DNA of 63,084 bases, counting the filler, from Octopus bimaculoides (Eukaryota), in NCBI RefSeq assembly GCF_001194135.2. It is 4 parts of 3 records of this genome, joined end to end, with 100 filler letters (N's around TTAATTAATTAA, not from the genome) between each part and the next. Parts side by side here need not be neighbours in the genome. Positions count along the whole stretch, not along the records: positions 48,269 to 63,084 come from NC_068982.1; 3 more parts are not named here. One strand, given 5' to 3'. A model generated the notes under the pieces. It did no database searches. It saw nothing but the letters and a program-made list of their open reading frames with translations, and was not told the origin of the DNA. The position numbers and the translations under genes were made by a program. Each line of letters starts with the position of its first letter. Positions within the stretch are counted from its first letter, which is position 1. Positions 48,269 through 63,084 of the stretch are shown piece by piece.

Positions 48269-48334
<66 letters not shown>

Positions 48335-48514
48335 AAAATTAAAGTATACCCAGAAATGTTGGGAAACAGTATTTCAAGCTCGGATACATTTTGAGAGTTT
48401 AAAAGCTACACTTTCTACCTGATTATTACCTGAAATGTCGCCTTTCAGGTAATAATCTGAAAACTATAAGCACCATGCGCACATACATACATACATACAT
48501 GCATACATACATAC

Positions 48515-48545
<31 letters not shown>

Positions 48546-48899
48546 CTCATATATACAGTATATATTTAATAATAAATGTCATTCTAGGGTGTTAGGAAAA
48601 TTGCAGCAAGAATGTGAGAGAGAAAATTCAGTGATGTGCTCCGGAAATTACTCCGTTAAATGCCCGGATCTCATTTATTTTTCATATATTCAAAGGATTT
48701 TAAAAATGGGACAGCTTTATGCTGCATAGATATATACACCTTATGGTGCATAAATATATGGTGCATATGGTGCACCATATAGTGCATAAATATATGGACA
48801 GAGAGTATCTATGATTTGTTTACCACAAGAAGAATGTCTTACATCAAGTTCAGAATAATGTGGCTGATGCAAATGAGGTTGCGTTAAAGATGTGTTTTA

Positions 48900-49200
48900 G
48901 TTGTTTTGTGTGCCACAGAGAATATTTATCTAACGGGACTGATAGAGTTAGAAGAGCAAACTGAGAACACATGTGAGAATAAAGAAATTCCAACAAATAC
49001 ACTAATGTTTACTACAAAGAATATTGCTAATAGTGTTGGCAATTAGATAAAGGTCTGCAAGTTCTTGCTGATAACAACCCTAACGATGGAACTTAACAGA
49101 AAAATTACAAGACTAGTTAGCAATAATTTTTTTCCTACATTAGCTGTACAAATAAATGGTGTATCAAAGACATCAAGCAATTTTGGATGTTCTTAACTCC
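48900..49200 (+). mobile_element. Tigger/pogo-like transposase C-terminal remnant
   Basis: LIELEEQ...EIP...FTTKNIAN, frameshift, LDKGLQVLADNNPN; resembles the TIGD1-type tail (ELMELE...KFTTK.LA...GL..LE..DPN). Confidence 0.55.
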
Positions 49201-49724
49201 TCAAATATGTATTAATGACGGACTGTAATAAAGAAGATAGTGCAACTCATCTTCCAAGTGACTCTCAGTCCGCCCTTCACACAGTCGTCAACATTTTTCT
49301 TAGCAAGTACACGGCTTACTACGATCTTCCGACTATCTGTCCTCTGACGTTTTTCACTTTTTGAATTTCTCATTACGACATTGCTATACTTGTTATATAA
49401 ACTGGAAATACGAGGGATTCTAATTAAAATTCATAATACTAGAATGTAAGTAAAACTCTAAAAACTCGATACTAAGCAATTACTCGCAAGAACCATGTAC
49501 AAAAGTTTACATATTCCACTTGATATTCCTAAGTAAACACTAAAAGACATCTAGGAGGATTTTTTTACCATTTCCTTCGCATCCGAGGTTTAAATATACT
49601 TCCAAATTTCTGTTTCGTGACTTCTTCCAAAAGTCTGAAGTAGTCAGTCACTCATTAGTAAATTATTTAAATCAACTGATTTCTTAATTTGGCACATTGT
49701 TCTACATTTTTTGAGAGTTATACA

Positions 49725-49730
49725 TTTATT
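49725..49730 (-). promoter_or_regulatory. candidate polyadenylation signal for the octapeptide-repeat gene
   Basis: First minus-strand AATAAA I found downstream of the TAG at 50234; common hexamer in AT-rich DNA. Confidence 0.25.
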
Positions 49731-50233
49731 GAGTAATCTGTCATCAAATGAAGTTTGCTACCGAATCTTACAGTTTCTCTGACTGCACTAAAGCTGACGT
49801 GTACCAATTATTGACACCAAAACCTTTTGATGTTTAAACACTCGTAGTTTATGTAGCTATCAAGTAAAACATGCCTTCGCAAAACCTAACAGATCATCAA
49901 CTAAATCGACCTCAGCTGGTCATTTATATAAAAATTGGGTCCCATTGAACAGAACAGCTTTGGGTATAGAAACAAACATTGAGTAGCAATAACTCTGATG
50001 CCTTTTGTCTGATCTTGAGTTAAGCAGCAACAGCAAGGACAACAACAAGAATTATCATTCATCAATTTCTAGTGTCGAGTATGGAAATGAAGCCATAGAT
50101 ACATAAGCATGAAGCATATGAAGATACAAAACTATATACACTGCAAAGAATAAAAGTTTGTGCGCTACTGAGTTGAGTATGAATTGCATGGATGTGTTAG
50201 AATATAAAGTTAATAAAATGCTTACATGGAAGT

Positions 50234-52783
50234 CTATTCGTTAACATATTGATTGGCAATAAGTCTGTAGAACCACATTTTGTCGAACATATTGTCAATA
50301 TATTTGGCAATGTCGTAAGTGTTGACTACAGCAACGCTTTCAATTACGTCTATGAGAGTGAGGTCGAAGATTGACATGGCAACAGCTTCAGTGATCTCAA
50401 CAGAAACAGTATCTGTAATACCTCGTATGATATTATCACAAATTCTTAGAGCTGTTTTTTCCGTAGGTTCCATAGCAACCACTTTACCAATTTCTTTCGT
50501 GACCGCAGTGCTTATCTCCATAATAACAGCTGTGCTAATTTGCAGTGATACTACTTTGCTGACTTCCAATGTGACAGATTTACATATTCCTATCGTAACG
50601 GCTCTACTGATTTCTTTAGCAACCGCTCTACTAATCTCCATTATTACGGCATTACTAATCAATAATGACACAGACCTAGTCATATCCACGATTTTGCGTC
50701 TCTCTGCATCACAGCTTTGAATAAAATTCTGTCCTACGGCTTTGCTGATCTCTGCTGTAACCGATAAACTGACTTGCATTGCAATATCTTTACTGATCTT
50801 GTTAGTTACTGCTTCGCTTATCTCTGAGGTAATGGCTTTACTAATGCCCTGTATGACGGCCTTAGCTATATCGATGGCAATGGCTTCACTGATCTCTTTG
50901 GTGACCATTTGACAGATTTCAAATGTCACACTTTTGCTTATGTTCTTGCAAAATGTTCTGTTGGACTCTTTGGAAACCGATTTCTTGATATTTGAACACA
51001 CCTGCCTGCAGATTTCTATAGGCACTACTTTGTTAATTTCTGAGGAAATAGCATTAATAATCTCACTCGTTGCCGCCTCTGTGATATCCATGTTAATTTC
51101 TTTATTCAATTCCAGTAACACACACTCTTCAAATCCCCTTAATACTGCGCTTCTGATTGTCATAATAATTTTATTGTTTAATACCCTATCCACGACTGAA
51201 GTGCTTTGGATATCAACGTTCTCAATTCGCTTAGTAATCACGTTGCTAATATTCAGGCTGATGGTGTTGCTGAGGTTCTTCAAAACTTCCAAACTAATAT
51301 CAATGGAGATTTCCTTCTTAATATCCATGGTAATGCTTTTGCTAATAACTTTGGACACACCTTTCCCAATGCGCGCTGTAACCTCCTTGCTAATAGTCAT
51401 TGAGAGGCGTTTGTCGCTCTCGATGGTAATTCCGTCTTTGATTCTTTCGGCTACGATGGTACCAGTGTCTTGCAATTCATCAAACTTGCTGAAGGCCATA
51501 GAAACAGCATTTTTAACTTCTCTCTCAACATCACTGCTAAAATCTAGTGATATAGTTTTACTAACGATGTCTGTTATAATGCCACTACTAATTACTTGTG
51601 TCAGGTCATTGCAGATGTCAATCACTAAATTCTCGCTCACACCCTTGGAAACTGCATTATTGATTTCTTGGTGAATGGTCCCATCTATCTCCATAGTTAC
51701 AGCTTTCATAATATGTTTGCTAACATAGTCGCTAATAATGTTATCAACTTCTATGTAGTAATTCTTGTCAGGACCGGGATTCTTGCTGATCTCCAAAGTC
51801 ACTGCTTTGTTCACTTCATCGGACATAGCCTGACTGATTTCTATAGTAACAGCGTCTATTATTTCTTTGTCAATAACCTCGCTGATATCAGCGGAAGCCT
51901 TTTTGCTAATTTTACTAATAACGTCTTTTGTGATCACCCGGGTCACAGTTTGACTGATATGCCTAGTTACTGCCATACCGATTTCGCTAGTAATAGCGTT
52001 GTTAATCTCTAAGGCAACAGCCTTGCTAATTTCCCGTGTGACCGCTTTGCAAACCTCTTTGATAACACTCGTAGGAATTTCAATATTCGCTGATTCACCA
52101 ATTTGTACTTCCATAGCTTTCCACATATTCTCTGATACAAGTTTGTTAATCTCCGTACCAATACATTTGCATATATAAACCATAACGGATTTGCTTATCC
52201 CACTGGTCACGGCTTTGCTAATCTGCATCGTAACTGCTTTATCAATCTCATTGGTTATGATGTTGCATACTTCTGTTGTAACAGCTTCACCAATTTTCAA
52301 AGCAACAACTTTACCAATCCCCATGGTAACGCATTTGCTTATCTCCAAAATCGCAGCATTTTTCAAATCGTGTGAGATCGGATAAATGTTCTTTCTTTTC
52401 ATAGCTTCGCTAATCTCAGTAGTAACAGCTGTGGTAATTTTTGATTTAATAGCTTCGTTAATGTCAATAGTTACAGATTTACGAATCTCTTTGGCGACGC
52501 TTTTACTGATCTGCAAAGTAAGAGATTTGTTAATCGCCAAAGCGATGAAATTTTGAATTTCTGTTGTAACAGATTTGCTAATCTTCGTGGAAACAGCTTT
52601 AGAAATGTTAAAACTGACAGCTTTGCTGTCAACCTCGAACTGTACAGCTTTTCTAACCTTCCTAGCAACAGCCTTACATATTTCCGTAGTAACAATTCTA
52701 CTGATTTCCATAGCAACAGTTCCACTGATATCCATGGTAACAGCTTTGCTGATCTGGATATTCTCAGCGTTACGGGTTTTCAT
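50234..52783 (-). CDS. uncharacterised 849-aa protein of about 100 degenerate octapeptide repeats (I-S-K-A-V-T-x-E)
   Basis: 2550 bp with no stop in AT-rich DNA; units ISKAVTMD/ISGTVAME/ISRIVTTE/ICKAVARK... keep Ile/Val at positions 1 and 5 while synonymous codons vary; no transposon motif; splice acceptor 160 nt upstream. Confidence 0.75.
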   Translation of the reverse strand: MKTRNAENIQISKAVTMDISGTVAMEISRIVTTEICKAVARKVRKAVQFEVDSKAVSFNISKAVSTKISKSVTTEIQNFIALAINKSLTLQISKSVAKEIRKSVTIDINEAIKSKITTAVTTEISEAMKRKNIYPISHDLKNAAILEISKCVTMGIGKVVALKIGEAVTTEVCNIITNEIDKAVTMQISKAVTSGISKSVMVYICKCIGTEINKLVSENMWKAMEVQIGESANIEIPTSVIKEVCKAVTREISKAVALEINNAITSEIGMAVTRHISQTVTRVITKDVISKISKKASADISEVIDKEIIDAVTIEISQAMSDEVNKAVTLEISKNPGPDKNYYIEVDNIISDYVSKHIMKAVTMEIDGTIHQEINNAVSKGVSENLVIDICNDLTQVISSGIITDIVSKTISLDFSSDVEREVKNAVSMAFSKFDELQDTGTIVAERIKDGITIESDKRLSMTISKEVTARIGKGVSKVISKSITMDIKKEISIDISLEVLKNLSNTISLNISNVITKRIENVDIQSTSVVDRVLNNKIIMTIRSAVLRGFEECVLLELNKEINMDITEAATSEIINAISSEINKVVPIEICRQVCSNIKKSVSKESNRTFCKNISKSVTFEICQMVTKEISEAIAIDIAKAVIQGISKAITSEISEAVTNKISKDIAMQVSLSVTAEISKAVGQNFIQSCDAERRKIVDMTRSVSLLISNAVIMEISRAVAKEISRAVTIGICKSVTLEVSKVVSLQISTAVIMEISTAVTKEIGKVVAMEPTEKTALRICDNIIRGITDTVSVEITEAVAMSIFDLTLIDVIESVAVVNTYDIAKYIDNMFDKMWFYRLIANQYVNE

Positions 52784-52943
52784 AGCTTAGCAGTTTTACT
52801 GCCCTTAAAAAGACAAAGATGACTTTCGCCGACGCTGTTCTTTTCCGCAGCTTCGCTGCAATCTATACAGTGAGACTTGGAAAACTTCAAAGCTCACCAT
52901 AGTAACGGCTTGCTTCGTTGCTATGACAATAGCATGGGGATTC

Positions 52944-52985
52944 CTTTAAACGTCAGAATAGAAAATAAAAGGACAAAAGCAAGAT
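52944..52985 (-). promoter_or_regulatory. candidate 3' splice site upstream of the octapeptide-repeat ORF
   Basis: Minus strand CTTGCTTTTGTCCTTTTATTTTCTATTCTGACGTTTAAAG|GAATCC: long pyrimidine tract ending in AG. Confidence 0.5.
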
Positions 52986-52997
52986 TACAAAATTTAA

Positions 52998-53035
<38 letters not shown>

Positions 53036-53462
53036 TACATACAAACATATTTACATACATACATACATACATANNNNNNNNNNNNNNNNNNNNNNNNNNN
53101 NNNNNNNNNNNNNNNNNNNNNNNNNNNNNNNNNNNNNNNNNNNNNNNNNNNNNNNNNNNNNNNNNNNNNNNNNNNNNNNNNNNNNNNNNNNNNNNNNNNN
53201 NNNNNNNNNNNNNNNNNNNNNNNNNNNNNNNNNNNNNNNNNNNNNNNNNNNNNNNNNNNNNNNNNNNNNNNNNNNNNNNNNNNNNNNNNNNNNNNNNNNN
53301 NNNNNNNNNNNNNNNNNNNNNNNNNNNNNNNNNNNNNNNNNNNNNNNNNNNNNNNNNNNNNNNNNNNNNNNNNNNNNNNNNNNNNNNNNNNNNNNNNNNN
53401 NNNNNNTTGTATACATACATACATGCATATATATAAATTTATCTCTGTAGTTTAAGCGCAGA

Positions 53463-55200
53463 GCTGTGGCCATGCTGGGGCACCGCCATTTATGATTTTG
53501 CTGATGTGTGAAGTCAGAAAGATAAGCCTATCATTTTTGGCATCTGCTCTGCTTCCTCCTTTATCGATTGGACATATTATTCCCTACTTCAGTTTGCTTG
53601 GCAACCTACCATTTGCGAGAAATCCCTGCAAGAGAATCTGTAGAGGTTTCTCCAGAGCACGATTACACGGTTTGAGGAGGATTGCTGGGAGACCATTCAC
53701 GGCCAGCAGTTGAGTTTTCCTCCACCTCATCTATGGCTAGGAGTAGATCTTCTTCGCTAATGTCGATGTAATCCATCGTAATTGCCTCACTGAGTATAGG
53801 TGAGTCGGCAAACAAAACCAACTGGTTCGTTCACTTTTGAACTGGTCATTTATTACCTCACTGATCCTGGCTGGACTATCTGTGACGGAGCCATCCTTTT
53901 GGAAGAGGGGTCCCATTTTGCAGCGTACTAAGGCTGTTTCTTTGGCATAATGAAAGAAGGCTATTGGCTTTTACTTAATGATTTTTTTGTTTTTTTTTTA
54001 ATAACCAAGGCTTCTTTGTCTGCTTTCTCCCTCAGATCGGATTCTTGCAGGCTTTTTTCAATCTCCATCAGTGTTGATTTTAGGCGGAACCATTCACTAC
54101 TTTTGGTTGGAGCGATTAGCAACCTTCGTCCTCGTCTCATGAGGACCTTCCTCTCCCTTGGAATCTTGTTCCTTTTTGTGTAGGCCTTGTGCTCTGGGAC
54201 ATATTTCTGGCATATGGTTTGCATAACAGACATGAAATATTCTAGTTTCATGCCAATGTCTGGTGTGGAGAGATATTTCGGCCAGTCTTGTATGAGGATC
54301 TCTTTTTGGATCAATTTCCAGTCTGCTTTGTAGAAGTTCACATTGGAAAGTTTCTGGGTGCTGCCTTTAGGCTGTATGCCACTGGCTACTTTTGATCCAT
54401 ACATAGATAGCTCTATTATGTTATGATCCGAAACTAATGTCGGTGTCACTTTCACATCATGAACGATGTCCATATAGTTTGTGAGGCAGAGATCCAAAAT
54501 GTTATTCGCCCTAGTTGGTCTGAGTACAACTTGCTCCATGAATAAGGCATTGGTGAGGTTGAGCAGGGACTCCACCTGTGCTTGTTTGCAATGAGCCATT
54601 CCTGAGAGCACGAGGCCTTCGGGCTATTTGACATTGGGGAAGTAGAAATCACCCATAAGAAATACGCTCACGTGGTGTTACCGTTTTATGAGGATTTCTT
54701 TAGTTCTTATGAGGCAGTCTTCAAACTTGCTTATGTGGTTTGGAACATCCGGTGGGCGATGTGTATTGCATATGACTATATTGTGTTGTCCTATGCATAC
54801 AATTATAGTGTCACATACTGAATTTGAGTATGACAGTAAGACCTGGAGTGTAAGGTCTTCACGGATGAATACAGCAACTCCACCATGGCTCCTTTCCCTT
54901 CTGTCTGTACGCAGTATGGTATTTTGGTACGTGTACTTCTGCATCCTCTATATCAGGGCTCAGATGAGTTTCCTCGATTTCTATGAAAAGGGATTAATTG
55001 CATGCAGCAATGTCTCTCGGGAAAAAAGTTTTGCTTTTATTGTTGTGATGCAACAGGCCCCCAACATTTAGTTAAAATATTGGCGTGATGACTGTGCAGG
55101 CGTTAGGGGAGACCATCCCAATTCTGTTGATTGTGCTGGTCTTGTGCAGTGGTAGGCAAGGTTCCTTATTTGAGCTTGATGTTTGCGCTTGGTTACACCT
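53463..55200 (-). mobile_element. CR1/L2-type LINE copy 1: endonuclease and linker, RT deleted, 3' tail kept
   Basis: RTDRRERSHGGVAVFI, HRPPD, DF.FPN, PTRANNILDLCLTN, SDHNIIE (APE endonuclease); ends at GIICPIDKGGSRADAKN.RLI.LTSHISK, then directly GGCGGTGCCCCAGCATGGCCACAG. Confidence 0.88.
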
Positions 55201-55339
55201 TTTTCTCTGACGAGTGGACGTATTACCTAATAATGATTATCAATTTTAGATTTTATTTAGAAAGGGAATACATTCATGAAACGATCCTAAGATATTTCAA
55301 GTTTTTAAATAATCATACTTTATATATTTATATATTTAT

Positions 55340-56960
55340 CTATTGGTACAATATTATTTTGGACGTATATCTTGTGTGCCTGAAATTTCATAGCATTGAA
55401 CTGCATGTTATTTTTTGTTAGCCCATTTGTATATTCCATTCAGATCTTTCTGTAGTTTTACTATATCTTCTGGGTTCCTAACTGCCTGCGATACTTTTGT
55501 GTCATCAGCATAACTGGTCAGATTGGATGACGATACCGCAGAGGGCATGTCTGAGAGGGTCACCACAAATAGTAGTGGTCGCATTACAGTTCCCTGTGGG
55601 ACTCCGCTGAGAACTTGTCTCTTTTGAGTGAGCACCATTGGCTACAACTGTCTGAATCCTGTCCTTCAGAAAGTCATGCAGCCAATCTCCCAGTTTCCCA
55701 GTAATACCAAGGTTTCGCAGCTTGTTACATATCGTGTGATGATCAACCTTGTCGAAGGCCTGGGCAAAGTCGAGGTATATTACATCTACAATTGAATGGT
55801 TTAGCTGTTGTTCCTCTATCAAGTGGGATTTCACACTGAAATTGAGGTGTTTGTTTAAACGATTCGAGATATTTATTCTCCGCTGCATGAGTATTCTCCT
55901 GTTTCGGGAATGATGTTTTTGTGTGTATTAGCTCTCTTCTCTGGGGCATATTTACATGATATGAATTTATTGGAGTATCTCTTTTTCAAGTGACTTTCAG
56001 TCGGCCTTCTAGAAATTTAGGTAGGATAAGTTTTGAGTGCCACCTGTGCGGGGGTTATCTTTAGTTAATTCCGGATCATACATTGTCAGTTCTATAATGT
56101 TATGGTCTGAGAATATTGTCGGTGATATATTTACGTAATGGATAATTCCCACTTTGTTTGTAAAACACAGGTCCAGGATATTTTTGTACCTGACTAGAGA
56201 GAGTATGATCTGCTCTATGAATAGTATTTTCGTAAGATCAAGTAGAGATTCTGCTTGATTTCGCTCCTTGTGCGTCATTCCTGAGGTTATGTTGCCCCCA
56301 GACCACCTGATTGTGGGGACGTTGAAGTCACTCATCAGGAATATAGTAGTACGTTGATCCAACTGTGTTAGTACTTCCTTTATCGCAGTGAGGCTTTCCT
56401 CAAGTTTTCCATCAGGATTTGAGGCATCAGGCGGGCGATATAGTGTGAATATCACTATATCAACTTGTTTTAGATGTACTATGAGTGTGTCACACACCGA
56501 GTTCGAGTTCGATAACAGGGTTAATGCTGTGACATCTTCTCAGATGTACATTGCAACTCCACCATGACTTCTTTATCTTCTGTCAGTACGGAAGATAGTA
56601 TACATTGGTATGTGCATCTCCGCATCATGTATGTCTGCAGATAGGTGTATTTCTGTAAGAGCAATGCATGCAGAAAGATTCTTCAGGTGAACAATTTTGA
56701 ATTTCCTGTTGTTCTGTAGCAGACCTCTTACATTTATTAGTAGAAATGGCATTGGTGTTAGTGTGCTGGGTGGCTTGGTGGCAGTGGTGGCCAACCGGAG
56801 TACATCAATTGTGGTGGTGCGTGGGTACATAGATCAGCTTTGTTTGTAGCCAAGATTACCGTTGCACTATTTCCTGTGCCATACTTAAAAAATGTCGTTG
56901 CTCAACCGTTGCAGCTTGTACTGCATCTGCATATGACTTCTGCCTGGCCTTCATATATAT
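55340..56960 (-). mobile_element. CR1/L2-type LINE copy 2: ORF1 end, endonuclease, partial RT (internally deleted, 3'-truncated)
   Basis: IALTEIHL, FRTDRR, LYRPPD, SDFNVP, NILDLCFTN, SDHNIIE; YLDFAQAFDKVDH, SGVPQGTVMRPLLF, SYADDTK, NMQFNAMKFQ; multiple frameshifts. Confidence 0.92.
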
Positions 56961-57084
56961 ATATAAAGTAACAAACTGAGCAACAGAAATACTTCAAAGG
57001 GGTGCGTTATATATACAGTTCACTGGTATGTCAGTTGAATACCATATAAATATTCGTATAATGCAATAGTAAACTTAAATTAGA

Positions 57085-58033
57085 AAGATACTACCGACAA
57101 TCCAATAAAACAAGATGACGTCACAAGCTTACAGCGGGACCTGAATTCAACATACAAGCGGGCCGAAATAAATAACATGGAGTTTAATGCTGGAAAATTT
57201 CAAGCACTGTACTATCAACACACGAATACTGTACAGGCTGCATATACAGGACCCGAAGGCATTACAATCCCAGAGTCACAGACACTGAAAGACTTGGGGA
57301 TCAGTATGTGCAATGGTGGTCATTTTTTTATGCACATTAGCAAGATGGCAGCAAAGTGAAGACAAAAGGCAGGACAAGAGACGAAGAAACTTTGGTGAAT
57401 ATGTGGAGAACCTTTGTTCTCAGCCGCCTGGACTACTGCTCCCAGTTATGGGCACCGCATAGTGCCAAACTAACAGCAGAGCTTGAAGCAGTTCAACGCC
57501 ACTACACTAAAAAGCTTGAAACAGTGCAGCGGATGAGCTACAGAGATAGGTTGAGAAAACAATTGCTTTACTCCCTGGAGCGAAGGTGTGACAGATGTGC
57601 AATAATACATATATGGAAATTCCTAGAAGGGCTAATACCTAACTTCGGCATTGAGTGTTATACAAATGTCAGAACTGGCCGCCATTGTATTATAACAAAG
57701 GTACTATCTGCTCAATCTACATTCAGGACCATGTACTGCAATAGTCTAGGGTTTAAAAGCCCACAGCTCTTCAATGCTCTGCCACAAAAATTAAGAAATC
57801 TGCATAACGCGGAAGTAGATGTCGTCAAAAAGGAACTAGACACCTTCCCCTCCACAATACCGGATGAACTAACAGCCCCACATGAGGTGCAGACGGAGGC
57901 AGCGGAAGCAAACTCCCTTATACTCAATATGGACCAACAGCTGAGACAAAGGCACACACAGGATTAGTGATGCGAACCTCGGCAGAACTTAGGAAATCAG
58001 AAAGACCATGGTGGTGCTCCAGCATGATCACAG
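57085..58033 (+). mobile_element. CR1/L2-type LINE copy 3: 5'-truncated 3' end with tail
   Basis: LQRDLN..NNMEFNAGKFQ, FVLSRLDYCSQLWAP, LEAVQR.YTK, LYSLERR, PQLFNALPQKLRN, K.ELDTF...IPDE; ends GGTGGTGCTCCAGCATGATCACAG then microsatellite. Confidence 0.92.
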
Positions 58034-58044
58034 TGTGTGCGTAC

Positions 58045-58092
<48 letters not shown>

Positions 58093-58785
58093 NNNNNNNN
58101 NNNNNNNNNNNNNNNNNNNNNNNNNNNNNNNNNNNNNNNNNNNNNNNNNNNNNNNNNNNNNNNNNNNNNNNNNNNNNNNNNNNNNNNNNNNNNNNNNNNN
58201 NNNNNNNNNNNNNNNNNNNNNNNNNNNNNNNNNNNNNNNNNNNNNNNNNNNNNNNNNNNNNNNNNNNNNNNNNNNNNNNNNNNNNNNNNNNNNNNNNNNN
58301 NNNNNNNNNNNNNNNNNNNNNNNNNNNNNNNNNNNNNNNNNNNNNNNNNNNNNNNNNNNNNNNNNNNNNNNNNNNNNNNNNNNNNNNNNNNNNNNNNNNN
58401 NNNNNNNNNNNNNNNNNNNNNNNNNNNNNNNNNNNNNNNNNNNNNNNNNNNNNNNNNNNNNNNNNNNNNNNNNNNNNNNNNNNNNNNNNNNNNNNNNNNN
58501 NNNNNNNNNNNNNNNNNNNNNNNNNNNNNNNNNNNNNNNNNNNNNNNNNNNNNNNNNNNNNNNNNNNNNNNNNNNNNNNNNNNNNNNNNNNNNNNNNNNN
58601 NNNNNNNNNNNNNNNNNNNNNNNNNNNNNNNNNNNNNNNNNNNNNNNNNNNNNNNNNNNNNNNNNNNNNNNNNNNNNNNNNNNNNNNNNNNNNNNNNNNN
58701 NNNNNNNNGACTATGTTATTTTGCCAACATGGTTTACATATAGAAGTACAAAGTACATAAGGAATTAGAGGATGAACAGAAGTTT

Positions 58786-58914
58786 AATCTTACAGCTGTT
58801 TCGGCCTAGTTTTAGCAAGCCCCATTCTATCCGAATATTCCTTTCCGGAGTGATTATCGGATGACATTTTGAAATGGGGTTACATGCCCGAACCTCTAGG
58901 CCTCTTCAGAGATT
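58786..58914 (-). ncRNA. type-I hammerhead ribozyme with long structured helix-II extension
   Basis: Minus strand: AATCT-CTGAAGA-GGCCTAG-[86 nt]-CTAGGCC-GAAA-CAGCTG-TA-AGATT. Canonical core, 5-bp helix I, 7-bp helix II, palindromic helix III, GUA cleavage triplet; insert folds further (CCCCATT/AATGGGG, ATCCGA/TCGGAT). Confidence 0.75.
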
Positions 58915-59089
58915 CACAAAGGGTTACATATAAATGTAGAGCAAGAGGTAAAAACAGAGGTGTGGTAGAGACCAGAAGAAAAATAACAGCAAAAATAAGA
59001 TAGAAATAAAAATAAAAAAATAAAAAATAAAATTGAAATCAAAATATAAATAAAAATAAAAATAAAAATAAGGGTACAGCAGGAAAAAA

Positions 59090-59123
<34 letters not shown>

Positions 59124-60044
59124 GAATATATAAATGAAGGTATAGCATGTGGGACATGCAAAAATATAGAAAAGATATGTGTCAAAAACCCTTAAAAATA
59201 CAAGGCACCCAAAAAGCCTACAAACATCATAGATAGGTCGCTATAGGCACTCCAATGCACATCTATATGTGTGGGTTCGTGTGCACAGTCTTACTCGGAT
59301 GTCCCCTTACTCTCATGTGTGCATATACAAGTTTTTATAAGCAAACATTCCACCACATACGTTGTTTGTGGTATCAGCTCTATTAGCCGTATCTAGGAAG
59401 CTGTAAGTGTTTTTTAGAAAGGAAGTTTTGTTGAGTGTGTGTGTTATTTCTGTATATATTGGAAGGTTCTATGTAGAAGTTCATTTTATACAAGTTATTA
59501 ATGTTCTAGTAGCAATAACAGTGATAGTGACGATGATGGTGACAACAACAACNNNNNNNNNNNNNNNNNNNNNNNNNNNNNNNNNNNNNNNNNNNNNNNN
59601 NNNNNNNNNNNNNNNNNNNNNNNNNNNNNNNNNNNNNNNNNNNNNNNNNNNNNNNNCCCCCCCCCCCCTACACACATACATATATATTTGTTGTTTGTAT
59701 TTGTAATTGTGTACAATGTTCTTCATTTTTCGTCTTTTTCTGTACCATGTTCTCCGTTTATTTGCGTTTGTTGCCGTACACATTCGCTAGCTTTAAAACG
59801 AAGGGTTCTAATATTCTTAGCTTAAACCTTTTTTTTTTTTTGTGTGGTGGGGGACACCAGATTGAACCCTCTCAAGTGTAACTGCCCGAAACGGTCATGA
59901 CCTCTGGGACTTGACTGAGGAACGAAGGCCACGAATGACCCCTCTGTTTTTTTACTGTCTTTCTAATTGTTGTTTCTCTTGTCCACCTTGTATCATCTAT
60001 CTGTCCGAATGCATTATTGTACTCTATTGCGTTTTGTTGCATAT

Positions 60045-60090
60045 ATATAGAGAGAGAGAGAGAGAGTGAGAGAGAGGAGAGATAGGTAGG

Positions 60091-60156
<66 letters not shown>

Positions 60157-60168
60157 TAGATAGATAGT

Positions 60169-60220
<52 letters not shown>

Positions 60221-60240
60221 GAAGATGGATAGTTAGATAG
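60045..60240. repeat. compound (GA)n/(GATA)n microsatellite
   Basis: Direct reading. Confidence 0.95.
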
Positions 60241-61157
60241 ATGCAGATACAAAACATGCATAAATACATGTGTATGAGTGTGTACATGTGCCGTTCATAA
60301 AGATCTTTCTATCTGTTCACGGCCAGCCCACGTGTGTTACCAATATTAGATACAAGACTTTTTAAGTGGACAAGTAAAGGAGTTTCTGAAATTATAGGTT
60401 TCTTCGTGCTTTGTGTTCGCGGTCATAATGAGCGACCTAGGAGAATATATAAGTGTGTGTGCGCTTGTGTTCGTGAGTGTGTGTCTGTCTGCACGTGCGT
60501 GCGTGTGTCTGTCACTGCACGTGCGTGCATGTGTTTGTGTGCGCGCAAGTATGTATAAATATATGCAAATTCATACACATATGAAGCCATATATGCGTGC
60601 ACACACATATAGGTGCATAAACGAGTTGATGCACGGCCATTTACCCATAACACACACATGCACATACACACACACACACACATACGCACACACAGATACA
60701 GACACACACACATACATGGACATACACATGTCTTGCCTTTATTTCCCAGAATTGCAAATGTGTTTTATACAAAATAGGAAACTTCAAATATAATTCGGAA
60801 AATTCGGAAAATGTTAGAGGTTAATGGAATTTTTCAACTGGAATGGCATTTCTGTCTTATGGACTGAAATTAAAGTTTGAAATCAAACGATAAATAAAAG
60901 ATAAAACATCTTGTGGATATTGCACAGAAAATTATATATTTTTTGTTTTTTACATTTTGGCAAAGTTAAAGTAAAGAGAGGCATCACATAAGTTATCAAT
61001 ATATATTTTAGTCCTCTCCCCGCTTTATTCCTTTTCTCGTATCTCGATAGTATCTTTACATGATACTGCATGGACAGCTAAAACAATCAGTGAGAAGCCG
61101 TAGTAAATGGTACTGCATTACACTCGTTTGTCTATATGTTATACCAAATCATCCAAG

Positions 61158-61190
<33 letters not shown>

Positions 61191-63005
61191 NNNNNNNNNN
61201 NNNNNNNNNNNNNNNNNNNNNNNNNNNNNNNNNNNNNNNNNNNNNNNNNNNNNNNNNNNNNNNNNNNNNNNNNNNNNNNNNNNNNNNNNNNNNNNNNNNN
61301 NNNNNNNNNNNNNNNNNNNNNNNNNNNNNNNNNNNNNNNNNNNNNNNNNNNNNNNNNNNNNNNNNNNNNNNNNNNNNNNNNNNNNNNNNNNNNNNNNNNN
61401 NNNNNNNNNNNATATATATATATATATATATATATATAGTTGAGATTTTATCAAGTAGCAGCTGTAATAAAAGCCATATAAGTAACAGTTAATACAAATA
61501 TATAATTATGTTAATATAATTATAATAAGGGTACTAGTAAGTAGCACCACATGCTAGAAATAGACGCTAAATGGCTCTGAAAACTACATTACGTACTCCA
61601 TTAGCGTGGGTTGAAAGCGTGGAAAGTGAACACAGATTTTGTTGAAAAAAGGGTTGACTATAGATCGATTTCTACCTTAGAGATATAATATCCCTTTGCT
61701 GTCATGAGTATAGCATAACACATTCTACATAAATGCTAATATTTATACATACCCATACGGATTACACGTATCCTGAGTCTGACCCTTTGAACATTGAAAT
61801 CTTATAAAATTCGGCAGTTCCATTCCAGCACATGTTACTTGCCCACCTTACATAACAGACTTTTATATTTTTTTGTGAACAAATGTTTATGTACCGGCAT
61901 TATTCTGCATAATGATACTCCATTTTGTCTAAAGCAATTTTCCACAAATTTTGTGAAATGCAAACGAAGCGAATGCTCTGAGTACGTGTGTTGTTGCATT
62001 TTTTTATAGACTTCATTTCGAATCAGTAAATATCATCTACCTCCTTAGTGCATTTAGCAGATTCTACCCTGTTGCATGATAATTAGAACTAGATTTCCGA
62101 CCTTTAGGTAACCTTTTCCTTTCTTTCGCCTATGAGGTCAAACCTCAGCGCTTCCTCCTGTAACTAGCCCATAAAATAAACTAAATTTTATTAAAATAGT
62201 AAAATTTAAAATAAAATGAAATTATTGTGCTGTACCGATTCCTTCCATGATCATTAGGAATATCAAATTCACAGTATGGCGCCTATTGAAAAGTGGTGGT
62301 TAATGCGGAAGCCATAGAATATTTCTTATGAAAGGTAAAACTGGCGGAACTAAAACACTTACCATTACATATTCCATAGTAGATCACATTTTAATTAGAC
62401 ATGCACACACTATCACACACACATACACACAGAGGCACACACACGCGCGCAGATATAAAGAACAGGTAACAAAGTTAAGTTGAACTAGTTGTACGTATTG
62501 ACAGTGACAGGAAATTAAGCCATTTGAGAAAGTATTTTCGAAGTCGTCTTCTTGAAGAAATAATACAAACTACAGACATCGCAATTTGCGATCCGATTAC
62601 CCTTTCACCAGGCACAAAATATTTCGAATATCATCACGTTGTAAGCAATGAGTGTCGGTTCTATGTATACGTAACTAAGTGAGTGTATGTTTGAGGAAGT
62701 AAACCGATGTGTAACTTCAACAATCAAAACTTTAAAGTACAAAATATCATAGAAGAATATTCAATTCATCTTGAAGCTAATAACGTGCGAATGCCTCAAA
62801 AACCGATTCATTACCTAAATTATAAGTCTTTTCATGTCTTGTCCAAAGACATAGTTAACGCATGTGCTGCAAAACTAATATGTGCGCTAGTAAACTCTTC
62901 ATCTAACCCCCTCCTCCTGTCTCTCTCCCCCACCCTCCCTCCTACCACCCATCTCTCTCCCTTCCCCACCTCCCCTCCTGCTCCGACTCCTACTTCTTTG
63001 TACGT

Positions 63006-63084
63006 CTCTTCACCTCTCTTCACTCCTACTTCTATTCACTTCTCTTCATTCCTACTTCTCTTCACTCCTACTTCTCTTCACTCC
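63006..63084. repeat. pyrimidine-rich ~16-bp minisatellite (CTCTTCACTCCTACTT), runs off the window end
   Basis: About 5 degenerate units. Confidence 0.85.

What the first reader, a model, noticed from the sequence alone, without database searches (positions are those of the whole stretch)
50234..52783. Unrecognised 849-aa protein built from about 100 octapeptide repeats
Seen: the only long clean ORF in the window; nearly all of it parses into 8-residue units (ISKAVTMD, ISRIVTTE, IDKAVTMQ, ISEAVTNK...) with a beta-branched hydrophobe every fourth residue, small residues at position 4, scattered Cys and a short non-repeat tail (MFDKMWFYRLIANQYVNE). Units differ greatly in DNA and use varied synonymous codons yet keep phase with rare 7/9-residue slips. 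No signal peptide, TM helix or enzyme motif is evident. Established: heptad (3-4) periodicity gives left-handed coiled coils and 11/15-residue periodicities give straight or right-handed ones; 8-residue units also build beta-solenoids such as ice-nucleation proteins. It does not match reflectin, suckerin or collagen composition. Inference: selection at protein level on a lineage-specific fibrous or solenoid protein, either a strongly right-handed helical bundle or a beta-solenoid.
Basis: partly seen in the sequence, partly recalled or inferred. Interest (0 to 1): 0.87.

Follow-up and report, generated by a model that had tools for sequence, protein, structure and literature searches.

The report
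Orphan octopus protein of octapeptide repeats
An intact, intronless 849-codon gene in the Octopus bimaculoides genome encodes a protein made almost entirely of 8-residue repeats (consensus ISKAVTME). The repeats have been kept by selection on the protein, it has no recognisable relatives, and it is most likely a long alpha-helical rod whose hydrophobic spacing (exactly every 4th residue) lies outside the range of known coiled coils.

Summary
The ORF at 50234-52783 (- strand, 849 aa) lies on Octopus bimaculoides chromosome CM046602.1. It holds 94 in-phase octads (88.6% of the protein), consensus I-S-K-A-V-T-M-E, in seven runs separated by six phase breaks.

Codon evidence shows selection on the protein:
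- Identity between units is 0.53/0.61/0.34 at codon positions 1/2/3.
- pS is 0.74 (saturated) against pN 0.44.
- Ser at position 2 is AGY in 38 of 39 cases.
- Adjacent units are no more alike than distant ones, so the array is old.

Pfam, PDB sequences and an exhaustive HMMER search of 1.84 billion cluster representatives gave no true relative. They found only unrelated proteins with convergent 4- or 8-residue arrays.

AlphaFold2 on one 96-residue block, aligned with its sister blocks, gives a single continuous helix at pLDDT above 90. Gly+Pro is 3.3%, and there is no 16- or 48-residue super-period. This favours long alpha-helices over a beta-solenoid.

The hydrophobic period is 3.95-4.0 residues, beyond the about 3.9 limit estimated for coiled coils. 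A canonical coiled coil is therefore not supported, and the assembly mode is unknown.

Transcription and orthologues in other cephalopod genomes could not be tested.

The parts
50234..52783 (-). Complete CDS of 849 codons plus TAG stop (stop codon at 50234-50236). It is single-exon as far as the sequence shows.
   Evidence: (a gene called at this position in GCA_001194135.2)
52787..52789 (-). In-frame TAA two codons upstream of the ATG (52781-52783). The N-terminus therefore cannot extend upstream within this exon.
   Evidence: read directly
52804..52822 (-). Polypyrimidine tract followed by AG (tcatctttgtctttttaag), 21 nt upstream of the ATG. This is a possible 3' splice site for a 5'-UTR intron; it is inferred and untested.
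   Evidence: inference
52754..52783 (-). Non-repeat N-terminus MKTRNAENIQ (residues 1-10).
52634..52753 (-). Octad run A, residues 11-50 (5 units).
51791..52630 (-). Octad run B, residues 52-331 (35 units with no phase break). Residues 52-147 were modelled as one continuous helix, interrupted at the Pro-containing unit NIYPISHD.
51569..51736 (-). Octad run C, residues 350-405 (7 units). It is preceded by an 18-residue irregular insert containing PGP.
51494..51565 (-). Octad run D, residues 407-430 (3 units).
51227..51442 (-). Octad run E, residues 448-519 (9 units; more degenerate).
50678..51181 (-). Octad run F, residues 535-702 (21 units).
50324..50659 (-). Octad run G, residues 709-820 (14 units).
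50237..50323 (-). Non-repeat aromatic-rich C-terminal tail NTYDIAKYIDNMFDKMWFYRLIANQYVNE (residues 821-849).
   Evidence: no protein in the collection shares words with it
49725..49730 (-). AATAAA 504 nt downstream of the stop codon; a candidate polyadenylation signal (inferred).

Best explanation
This is a real, intact protein-coding gene of Octopus bimaculoides with no recognisable family. It arose by amplification of a 24-nt unit (ATH AGY AAA GCN GTN ACN ATG GAR). The array has since been held by purifying selection on the peptide pattern I-S-K-A-V-T-M-E while synonymous sites randomised.

The product is most likely a set of long, nearly Gly/Pro-free alpha-helical rods of up to about 280 residues, interrupted at six irregular or Pro-containing inserts, with a short aromatic C-terminal tail.

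On such a helix the beta-branched I/V residues (positions 1 and 5) form one narrow hydrophobic seam. The seam is flanked by a Ser/Thr stripe (positions 2 and 6) and an Ala/Glu stripe (positions 4 and 8), with a Lys/Met-type stripe (positions 3 and 7) opposite. Because the spacing is 4.0 rather than 3.6 residues, the seam winds right-handedly around the helix about once every 36-39 residues.

The inferred mechanism is self-association through this seam into a fibrous or scaffold assembly inside the cell, since there is no signal peptide. Shown here: the ORF, the repeat anatomy, the protein-level selection and the lack of relatives. Predicted: the helical secondary structure. Inferred only: oligomerisation, cellular location and function.
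For: The ORF and its periodicity are confirmed. The locus lies in GCA_001194135.2, chromosome CM046602.1, between octopus LINE debris and microsatellites, and its GC content matches the flanks.

Evidence for selection on the protein:
- Identity between units is 0.53/0.61/0.34 at codon positions 1/2/3, and the minimum moves with the frame when the frame is shifted.
- pS is 0.742 against pN 0.443.
- All synonymous codons of I, V, A, T and E are used at the conserved columns. Ser at position 2 is AGY in 38 of 39 cases, whereas Ser at position 6 is TCN in 15 of 18, one step from Thr ACN.
- There is no similarity gradient with distance between units, so there has been no recent homogenisation.
- P(open by chance) is about 4e-29.

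Evidence for a helix:
- AF2 on residues 52-147, with an alignment of 9 in-phase blocks, gives one helix over block residues 2-79 with pLDDT 90-95; all five models have a mean of 78.6-86.9.
- Pro is 0.7% and Gly 2.6%.
- Position 7 is occupied by M, K, L, I and R, all long helix-favouring residues.
- The hydrophobic moment peaks at 90 degrees per residue.
- No 16-residue or 48-residue super-period is seen.
Against: - There is no evidence of transcription or translation.
- No orthologue or paralogue was found, which is odd for an array old enough to be saturated at synonymous sites.
- AF2 on the whole protein without an alignment is uninformative (pLDDT 34.5).
- The confident model rests on a shallow pseudo-alignment of internal repeats and on a monomer.
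- I+V+T make up 34% of residues, and these are beta-formers.
- Aliphatic residues also alternate with period 2 (power 16.5 against 8.9 at period 4 in run B), which also fits amphipathic beta-strands.
- A 4.0 periodicity is stated to be outside the range accessible to coiled coils (PMC4786415), so no known assembly geometry fits the seam.
- Charge-pair covariation at i+4 is not significant (z = 1.2).
Confidence: 0.5

Rival explanations
1. Beta-solenoid or cross-beta fibre. Each octad would be a 5-residue strand (V-T-M-E-I, with V, M and I facing inwards and T and E outwards) plus a 3-residue arc (S-K-A). Two octads would form each coil, as in the 16-residue coils of ice-nucleation proteins or the 2 x 9-residue coils of RTX beta-rolls.
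For: Aliphatic residues occupy odd positions 1, 5 and 7 (94/93/48%) against 4-16% at even positions, which gives a strong period-2 signal. I+V+T make up 34% of residues. Position 2 is S/N/G/T/D/C, all typical arc residues.
Against: AF2 gives a continuous helix at pLDDT >90 and no strands for the block. Gly is 2.6% and Pro 0.7%, with no conserved Gly or Asn turn column. The would-be core position 7 is K or R in 22% and S or T in 16% of units. Similarity at lag 16 is no higher than at lags 8 or 24, so there is no two-unit coil signature. There is no Pfam hit to ice-nucleation, RTX or other solenoid repeats.
Confidence: 0.15
2. Not a functioning gene. The ORF would be a relic, either a former gene no longer expressed or an ORF carried by an uncharacterised mobile element, that merely remains open.
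For: No annotated homologue was found, although Octopus vulgaris proteins are in the collection. The exact protein is absent from the 15-billion-protein collection. The ORF is intronless and sits directly downstream of decayed LINE fragments and next to assembly gaps. No expression data are available.
Against: 849 codons are open with P about 4e-29, while the other frames carry 14-131 stops. There is strong codon-position asymmetry, pN < pS, and conservative one-step replacements. No second copy lies within +/-10 kb. The ORF shows no similarity to any TE protein family in Pfam.
Confidence: 0.12
3. A flexible low-complexity spacer or disordered region of the same general kind as the Pro-containing 4- or 8-residue arrays found in many uncharacterised invertebrate, viral and bacterial proteins, with no defined fold.
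For: The best database hits are such arrays: IAEPVAEE in a Diploptera protein, ISTDINPS, VSKPVPVD, VTPEVTSE and others.
Against: The octopus units lack Pro (6 in 849 residues) and are 26% I+V with mean KD +0.17, which is far too hydrophobic and too poor in Gly and Pro for a disordered chain. AF2 is confident about a helix. Similarity to the hits is confined to the arrays.
Confidence: 0.08

Closest known systems
Right-handed alpha-helical coiled coils (hendecad 11/3 such as tetrabrachion RHCC, pentadecad 15/4, YadA 19/5 segment)
   Same: Long Gly/Pro-poor helices with a regular aliphatic seam whose periodicity exceeds 3.63, so the seam winds right-handedly. Beta-branched residues fill the seam.
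   Different: Periodicity here is 3.95-4.0. Only one residue per turn lies in the seam (a single row), rather than the a/d-type double row. By my own calculation (inference), matching the seam would need about 39 residues per supercoil turn, a pitch near 58 A.
Ice-nucleation protein repeats (8/16/48-residue hierarchy, beta-solenoid)
   Same: A very long array (tens of units) of 8-residue repeats rich in Ser, Thr and Ala.
   Different: There is no Gly/Tyr consensus (AGYGSTxT), no 16- or 48-residue super-period and no Pfam match. The predicted structure is helical, and the host is eukaryotic.
Small-xxx-small (GxxxG / GASright) helix-helix packing motifs, e.g. glycophorin A LIxxGVxxGVxxT
   Same: A four-residue spacing of a small residue immediately followed by a beta-branched residue (A4-V5 ... 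E8-I1; S2 ... T6). This favours close, right-handed helix crossing (knowledge from memory, not tested).
   Different: Those motifs span 2-3 turns in membrane helices. Here the pattern continues for hundreds of residues in a soluble, charged protein.
Uncharacterised proteins with near-identical octads found here: P0025 (ISKAVSRN, unnamed eukaryote-like ENA contig), P0010 (IRESVTAE, with ankyrin repeats), P0037 (ISQAIDAK)
   Same: They share the template aliphatic-x-polar-[A/S]-aliphatic-[T/S/D]-x-polar, without Pro.
   Different: Their arrays are short (about 10-25 units) and embedded in unrelated domain contexts and genomes. Similarity does not extend beyond the array, so this is convergence or undetectable homology, not orthology.

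Membership tests
Canonical alpha-helical coiled coil (heptad/hendecad/pentadecad) | Hydrophobic core periodicity between about 3.5 and 3.8 residues per turn | tested here: not met
   The Fourier peak of hydropathy is at 3.95 (power 207 against a shuffle maximum of 131). In run B, power at periods 3.5-3.9 is 0.03-0.36 against 8.9 at 4.0. Lag-7 and lag-11 identity is at or below background.
Canonical alpha-helical coiled coil (heptad/hendecad/pentadecad) | Long uninterrupted alpha-helices | tested here: inconclusive
   AF2 with a 9-row internal alignment gives a helix over block residues 2-79 at pLDDT >90, but the whole-protein single-sequence model has pLDDT 34.5. There are no experimental data.
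Canonical alpha-helical coiled coil (heptad/hendecad/pentadecad) | Oligomeric knobs-into-holes packing | not testable with these tools
   Only monomer prediction was available.
Ice-nucleation-protein-type beta-solenoid | 16-residue coil built from two different octads, with a 48-residue higher-order period | tested here: not met
   Identity at lags 8, 16, 24, 32 and 40 is 0.241, 0.240, 0.219, 0.218 and 0.195, a monotonic decline with no 16- or 48-residue enhancement. Unit-to-unit DNA identity is flat across lags.
Ice-nucleation-protein-type beta-solenoid | Gly/Ser/Thr/Tyr-rich consensus (AGYGSTxT) and a Pfam Ice_nucleation match | tested here: not met
   The consensus is ISKAVTME, with Gly 2.6% and Tyr 1.1%. 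No Pfam hit has an E-value better than 0.46.
RTX beta-roll / pentapeptide / hexapeptide solenoid repeats | Repeat length of 9, 5 or 6 with conserved Gly/Asp or [LIV]-[GAED]-x2-[STAV]-x motifs | tested here: not met
   The period is 8 and there are no Pfam matches.
Charged single alpha-helix (SAH) | E/K/R-dominated composition with i/i+4 opposite-charge pattern | tested here: not met
   K+R+D+E make up 24.7% and I+V 26%. The i+4 opposite-charge excess is not significant (z = 1.2).
11-mer amphipathic repeat proteins (apolipoprotein/perilipin/LEA/synuclein type) | 11-residue (11/3) periodicity | tested here: not met
   Lag-11 identity is 0.055, which is background.
Cephalopod structural repeat proteins (reflectin, suckerin) and collagen | Reflectin motifs rich in Met/Tyr/Arg/Asp; Gly/Ala/His-rich suckerin modules; Gly-X-Y triplets | tested here: not met
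   Composition is I 15%, S 11%, V 11%, K 9%, Gly 2.6%, His 0.5% and Tyr 1.1%. There is no Pfam match and no period 3.
Transposable-element ORF (LINE ORF1/ORF2 or other) | Similarity to TE proteins, multiple copies, element termini | tested here: inconclusive
   There is no TE domain in the ORF, no inverted or long direct repeats within it other than the octads, and no second copy in +/-10 kb. Genome-wide copy number could not be measured because no cephalopod genome was searchable.

The most novel reading that the evidence does not exclude
Octopus makes a natural protein whose several-hundred-residue alpha-helices carry a hydrophobic seam with an exact 4.0-residue period. They would assemble into a helical superstructure not in the coiled-coil catalogue. 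Candidates are an extremely right-handed supercoil (pitch about 55-60 A), helices with regularly spaced pi-bulges, or a lattice in which the I/V seam of one helix packs against the K/M stripe on the back of its neighbour. This would be a lineage-specific new fibre type.
Probability: 0.12. Interest if true: 0.75.

Novelty: new variant of a known kind. Interest (0 to 1): 0.45.

Why it matters
If the gene is expressed, it would be a taxonomically restricted octopus protein made of one of the longest and most regular octad arrays known. Its hydrophobic periodicity (4.0) is one that structural theory places just outside what alpha-helical coiled coils can accommodate. Solving the structure of one repeat block would either extend the known limits of helical supercoiling or reveal a different packing solution. 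Its tissue of expression could point to a cephalopod-specific material or cytoskeletal element. The session also shows that near-identical octads (ISKAVSRN, IRESVTAE, ISQAIDAK) recur in unrelated uncharacterised proteins, which suggests a general but undescribed repeat motif. If the gene is not expressed, it is simply an unannotated relic ORF of modest interest.

Tried and rejected
- **Pfam scan of the protein:** only noise, best E-value 0.46.
- **PDB sequence searches:** phmmer with the protein and hmmsearch with the repeat-block profile gave nothing significant.
- **The search for homologous proteins with the full protein:** the list of 8000 word-sharing candidates saturated and nothing scored E <= 0.001. 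With the 78-residue C-terminal region, no candidate was found at all.
- **Exhaustive phmmer against 1.84 billion representatives:** 46 hits at E < 1e-3. All that I inspected are unrelated proteins with 4- or 8-residue arrays from an insect, a crayfish, an abalone, bacteria and virus-like contigs. BLASTP against the most similar one, P0025, shows similarity only within the arrays. I rejected these as orthologues.
- **Exact look-ups:** the sequence is absent from the protein collection. A guessed C-terminal fragment starting at Met771 is not on record, so no transcript-derived fragment was found this way.
- **AF2 on the whole protein without an alignment:** pLDDT 34.5, unusable.
- **Charge-pair covariation as a helix-versus-strand discriminator:** no significant signal at any spacing.
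- **tblastn of the protein against the +/-10 kb locus L001:** no neighbouring paralogue, though about a third of that locus is N.
- **Rfam and tRNA scans of the piece:** nothing.
- **Literature searches** for octad repeats and for cephalopod orphan repeat proteins: no description of this protein.
- **Decayed non-coding satellite:** rejected because conservation follows codon positions.
- **LINE ORF1:** rejected because the ORF lies 3' of the endonuclease/RT fragments and has no TE domain.
Full report
**Provenance and observation.** An exact-product look-up places the ORF in Octopus bimaculoides assembly GCA_001194135.2, chromosome CM046602.1, around 171.45 Mb. This is the chromosome-scale assembly described in PMC9068888. 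In the piece 48269-63084, the ORF at 50234..52783 (- strand, 849 aa, ATG start) is the only long N-free ORF. GC content is 37-40% in the ORF and 33-43% in the flanks.

**Repeat anatomy.**
- Amino-acid identity at lag 8 is 0.241, against 0.082 +/- 0.009 in shuffles (z = 17.6). It stays at 0.24-0.20 for lags 16-40, and lags 7 and 11 are at background.
- A profile parse gives 83 clean octads. Counting every in-phase 8-mer gives 94 octads, 88.6% of the protein.
- These lie in seven runs: residues 11-50, 52-331, 350-405, 407-430, 448-519, 535-702 and 709-820. The runs are separated by inserts of 1, 18, 1, 17, 15 and 6 residues.
- The consensus is I-S-K-A-V-T-M-E. Aliphatic residues fill 94%, 93% and 48% of positions 1, 5 and 7, and at most 16% elsewhere.

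**Is it coding?**
- From base composition, the probability of 849 stop-free codons is about 4e-29. The other five frames contain 14-131 stops.
- Among the 83 aligned units, nucleotide identity is 0.53, 0.61 and 0.34 at codon positions 1, 2 and 3. The minimum moves with the frame when the frame is shifted.
- Nei-Gojobori-type counts give pS = 0.742, which is saturated, and pN = 0.443.
- At conserved columns, all synonymous codons are in use: Ile ATT/ATC/ATA 36/23/11, Val GTN 31/10/7/9, Ala GCN 20/6/7/4, Glu GAA/GAG 20/20.
- Ser at position 2 is AGY in 38 of 39 units. Its replacements (Cys TGY, Asn AAY, Gly GGY, Thr ACN, Ile ATH) are one-step neighbours of AGY. Ser at position 6 is TCN in 15 of 18 units, one step from Thr ACN.
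- This is the signature of an ancestral 24-nt unit diverging by point mutation under selection on the peptide.
- Adjacent units are no more similar in DNA than units 40 apart (0.49-0.52 at all lags). TRF sees almost no DNA tandem repeat. The array is therefore old and not homogenised.

**Gene structure.** An in-frame TAA lies two codons upstream of the ATG, so translation must start here. A polypyrimidine tract plus AG 21 nt upstream could be the acceptor of a 5'-UTR intron (inference). An AATAAA lies 504 nt after the stop (inference).

**Relatives.**
- Pfam gave nothing below E = 0.46. PDB sequences gave nothing with either the protein or a repeat-block profile.
- The word-indexed search of 5.8 billion clusters saturated with the full-length query and found no candidate for the non-repeat C-terminus.
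- The exhaustive HMMER search of 1.84 billion 50%-identity representatives returned 46 hits at E < 1e-3.
- Inspection shows these are unrelated proteins carrying arrays with an aliphatic residue every fourth position. Examples are IAEPVAEE (Diploptera), TSDVVQQV (Cherax), VAQEVTQD (Haliotis), ISTDINPS and VAEAVDKA.
- Three hits have strikingly similar Pro-free octads: P0025 ISKAVSRN, P0010 IRESVTAE and P0037 ISQAIDAK. They sit in unrelated architectures and genomic contexts, and similarity stops at the array. I treat them as convergent.
- As a positive control I searched with the neighbouring LINE RT fragment. This retrieved 'Hypothetical predicted protein [Octopus vulgaris]' entries, so annotated cephalopod proteins are in the collection.
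- The octad protein therefore has no annotated counterpart there. Raw cephalopod genomes could not be searched, so unannotated orthologues remain possible. No paralogue lies within +/-10 kb.

**Structure.**
- AF2 on the full protein without an alignment is uninformative (pLDDT 34.5).
- I aligned nine non-overlapping in-phase blocks of the protein with each other; all MAFFT gaps came out as multiples of 8. AF2 then folded residues 52-147 with this alignment.
- The result is one continuous helix over block residues 2-79 with pLDDT 90-95, broken only at the Pro-containing unit NIYPISHD. The five models have mean pLDDT 78.6-86.9.
- Independent features agree with long helices: Pro 0.7% and Gly 2.6%; position 7 filled by M/K/L/I/R; position 4 by Ala; and no 16- or 48-residue super-period of the kind that marks two-octad solenoid coils.
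- In favour of beta-structure, I+V+T make up 34% of residues, and aliphatic residues alternate with period 2 (power 16.5 at period 2.0 against 8.9 at 4.0 in run B).
- Against a beta core, position 7 is K/R in 22% and S/T in 16% of units.
- A charge-pair covariation test did not discriminate.
- I therefore favour helix over solenoid at roughly 4:1.

**What kind of helix?**
- The hydropathy spectrum peaks at 3.95 residues and the hydrophobic moment at 90 degrees per residue. There is no power at periods 3.5-3.9.
- On an ideal helix this gives four stripes: I/V (positions 1 and 5), S/T (2 and 6), K/M-type (3 and 7) and A/E (4 and 8). Each stripe winds right-handedly once per about 36-39 residues (my calculation; inference).
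- Hartmann et al. 2016 (PMC4786415) state that coiled-coil periodicities are limited by helix strain. They give a lower limit of 3.33, an expected upper limit of about 3.9 and a most extreme known value of 3.8 (YadA 19/5). [quoted passage not shown]
- The protein therefore fails the defining periodicity test for canonical or known right-handed coiled coils. It still most plausibly works like a fibrous helical protein that buries its I/V seam by self-association.
- How it does this is unknown. The options are an extreme supercoil, periodic local distortion, or seam-to-back lattice packing.

**Surroundings.**
- Upstream on the same strand lie decayed LINE fragments. These include two diverged copies of an endonuclease domain, 52% identical over 91 aa, with a Pfam Exo_endo_phos_2 match in the copy at 56009-56497, and an RVT_1 fragment.
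- A 203-aa RT C-terminal ORF lies on the opposite strand.
- Microsatellites and N gaps make up much of the rest.
- No RNA families or tRNAs were found.
- Nothing links the octad ORF mechanistically to these elements.

**Verdict.** This is a new, family-less variant of the tandem-repeat fibrous-protein theme. Interest is moderate, limited by the absence of expression and orthologue evidence and by the abundance of orphan repeat ORFs in large invertebrate genomes. It is raised by the unusually clean 4.0 periodicity and the strong internal evidence of selection.

Noticed in passing
window 53961-57967: A cluster of decayed LINE fragments lies immediately upstream of the octad gene. Two diverged copies of an apurinic-type endonuclease domain on the - strand (53961-54611 and 56009-56497) are 52% identical over 91 aa; the copy at 56009-56497 matches Pfam Exo_endo_phos_2. 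An RVT_1 fragment sits at 55505-55888 (-). An intact 203-aa RT C-terminal ORF at 57356-57967 (+) has its best named relatives in 'Hypothetical predicted protein [Octopus vulgaris]'.
   Followed up: partly
window 50319-52012 (+ strand): Three antisense ORFs of 133, 246 and 114 aa (50319-50720, 50934-51674 and 51668-52012) run opposite the octad CDS and encode Leu/Ile/Ser-rich hydrophobic sequence. They are most simply a by-product of the repeat's codon pattern, since the antisense frames still carry 14-22 stops overall.
   Followed up: partly
P0025 (L002 5001-7682), P0010 (L003 5001-6902), P0037: Unrelated, unnamed proteins from other sources carry Pro-free octads almost identical in template to the octopus unit (ISKAVSRN, IRESVTAE, ISQAIDAK). 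P0010 combines them with ankyrin repeats on a contig that also encodes ribonucleotide reductase and PARG-like genes. This suggests a recurrent, undescribed octad motif across distant lineages.
   Followed up: partly
window 53004-53433, 58040-58700, 59550-59650, 61190-61410; L001 14516-19386 and 20211-21629: Assembly gaps (runs of N) are consistently bordered by (TA)n, (ATAC)n and (GT)n microsatellites. About a third of the +/-10 kb locus is unsequenced, so nearby exons or paralogues could be hidden.
   Followed up: no
window 59872-60261 (-) and 60413-60793 (+): These are simple-sequence regions. They translate as SLSLSL/IYLSIYLS and as Cys/Val/His/Thr-rich repeats (CA/TG- and TCTA-type microsatellites), giving spurious ORFs of 126-129 aa.
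   Followed up: no
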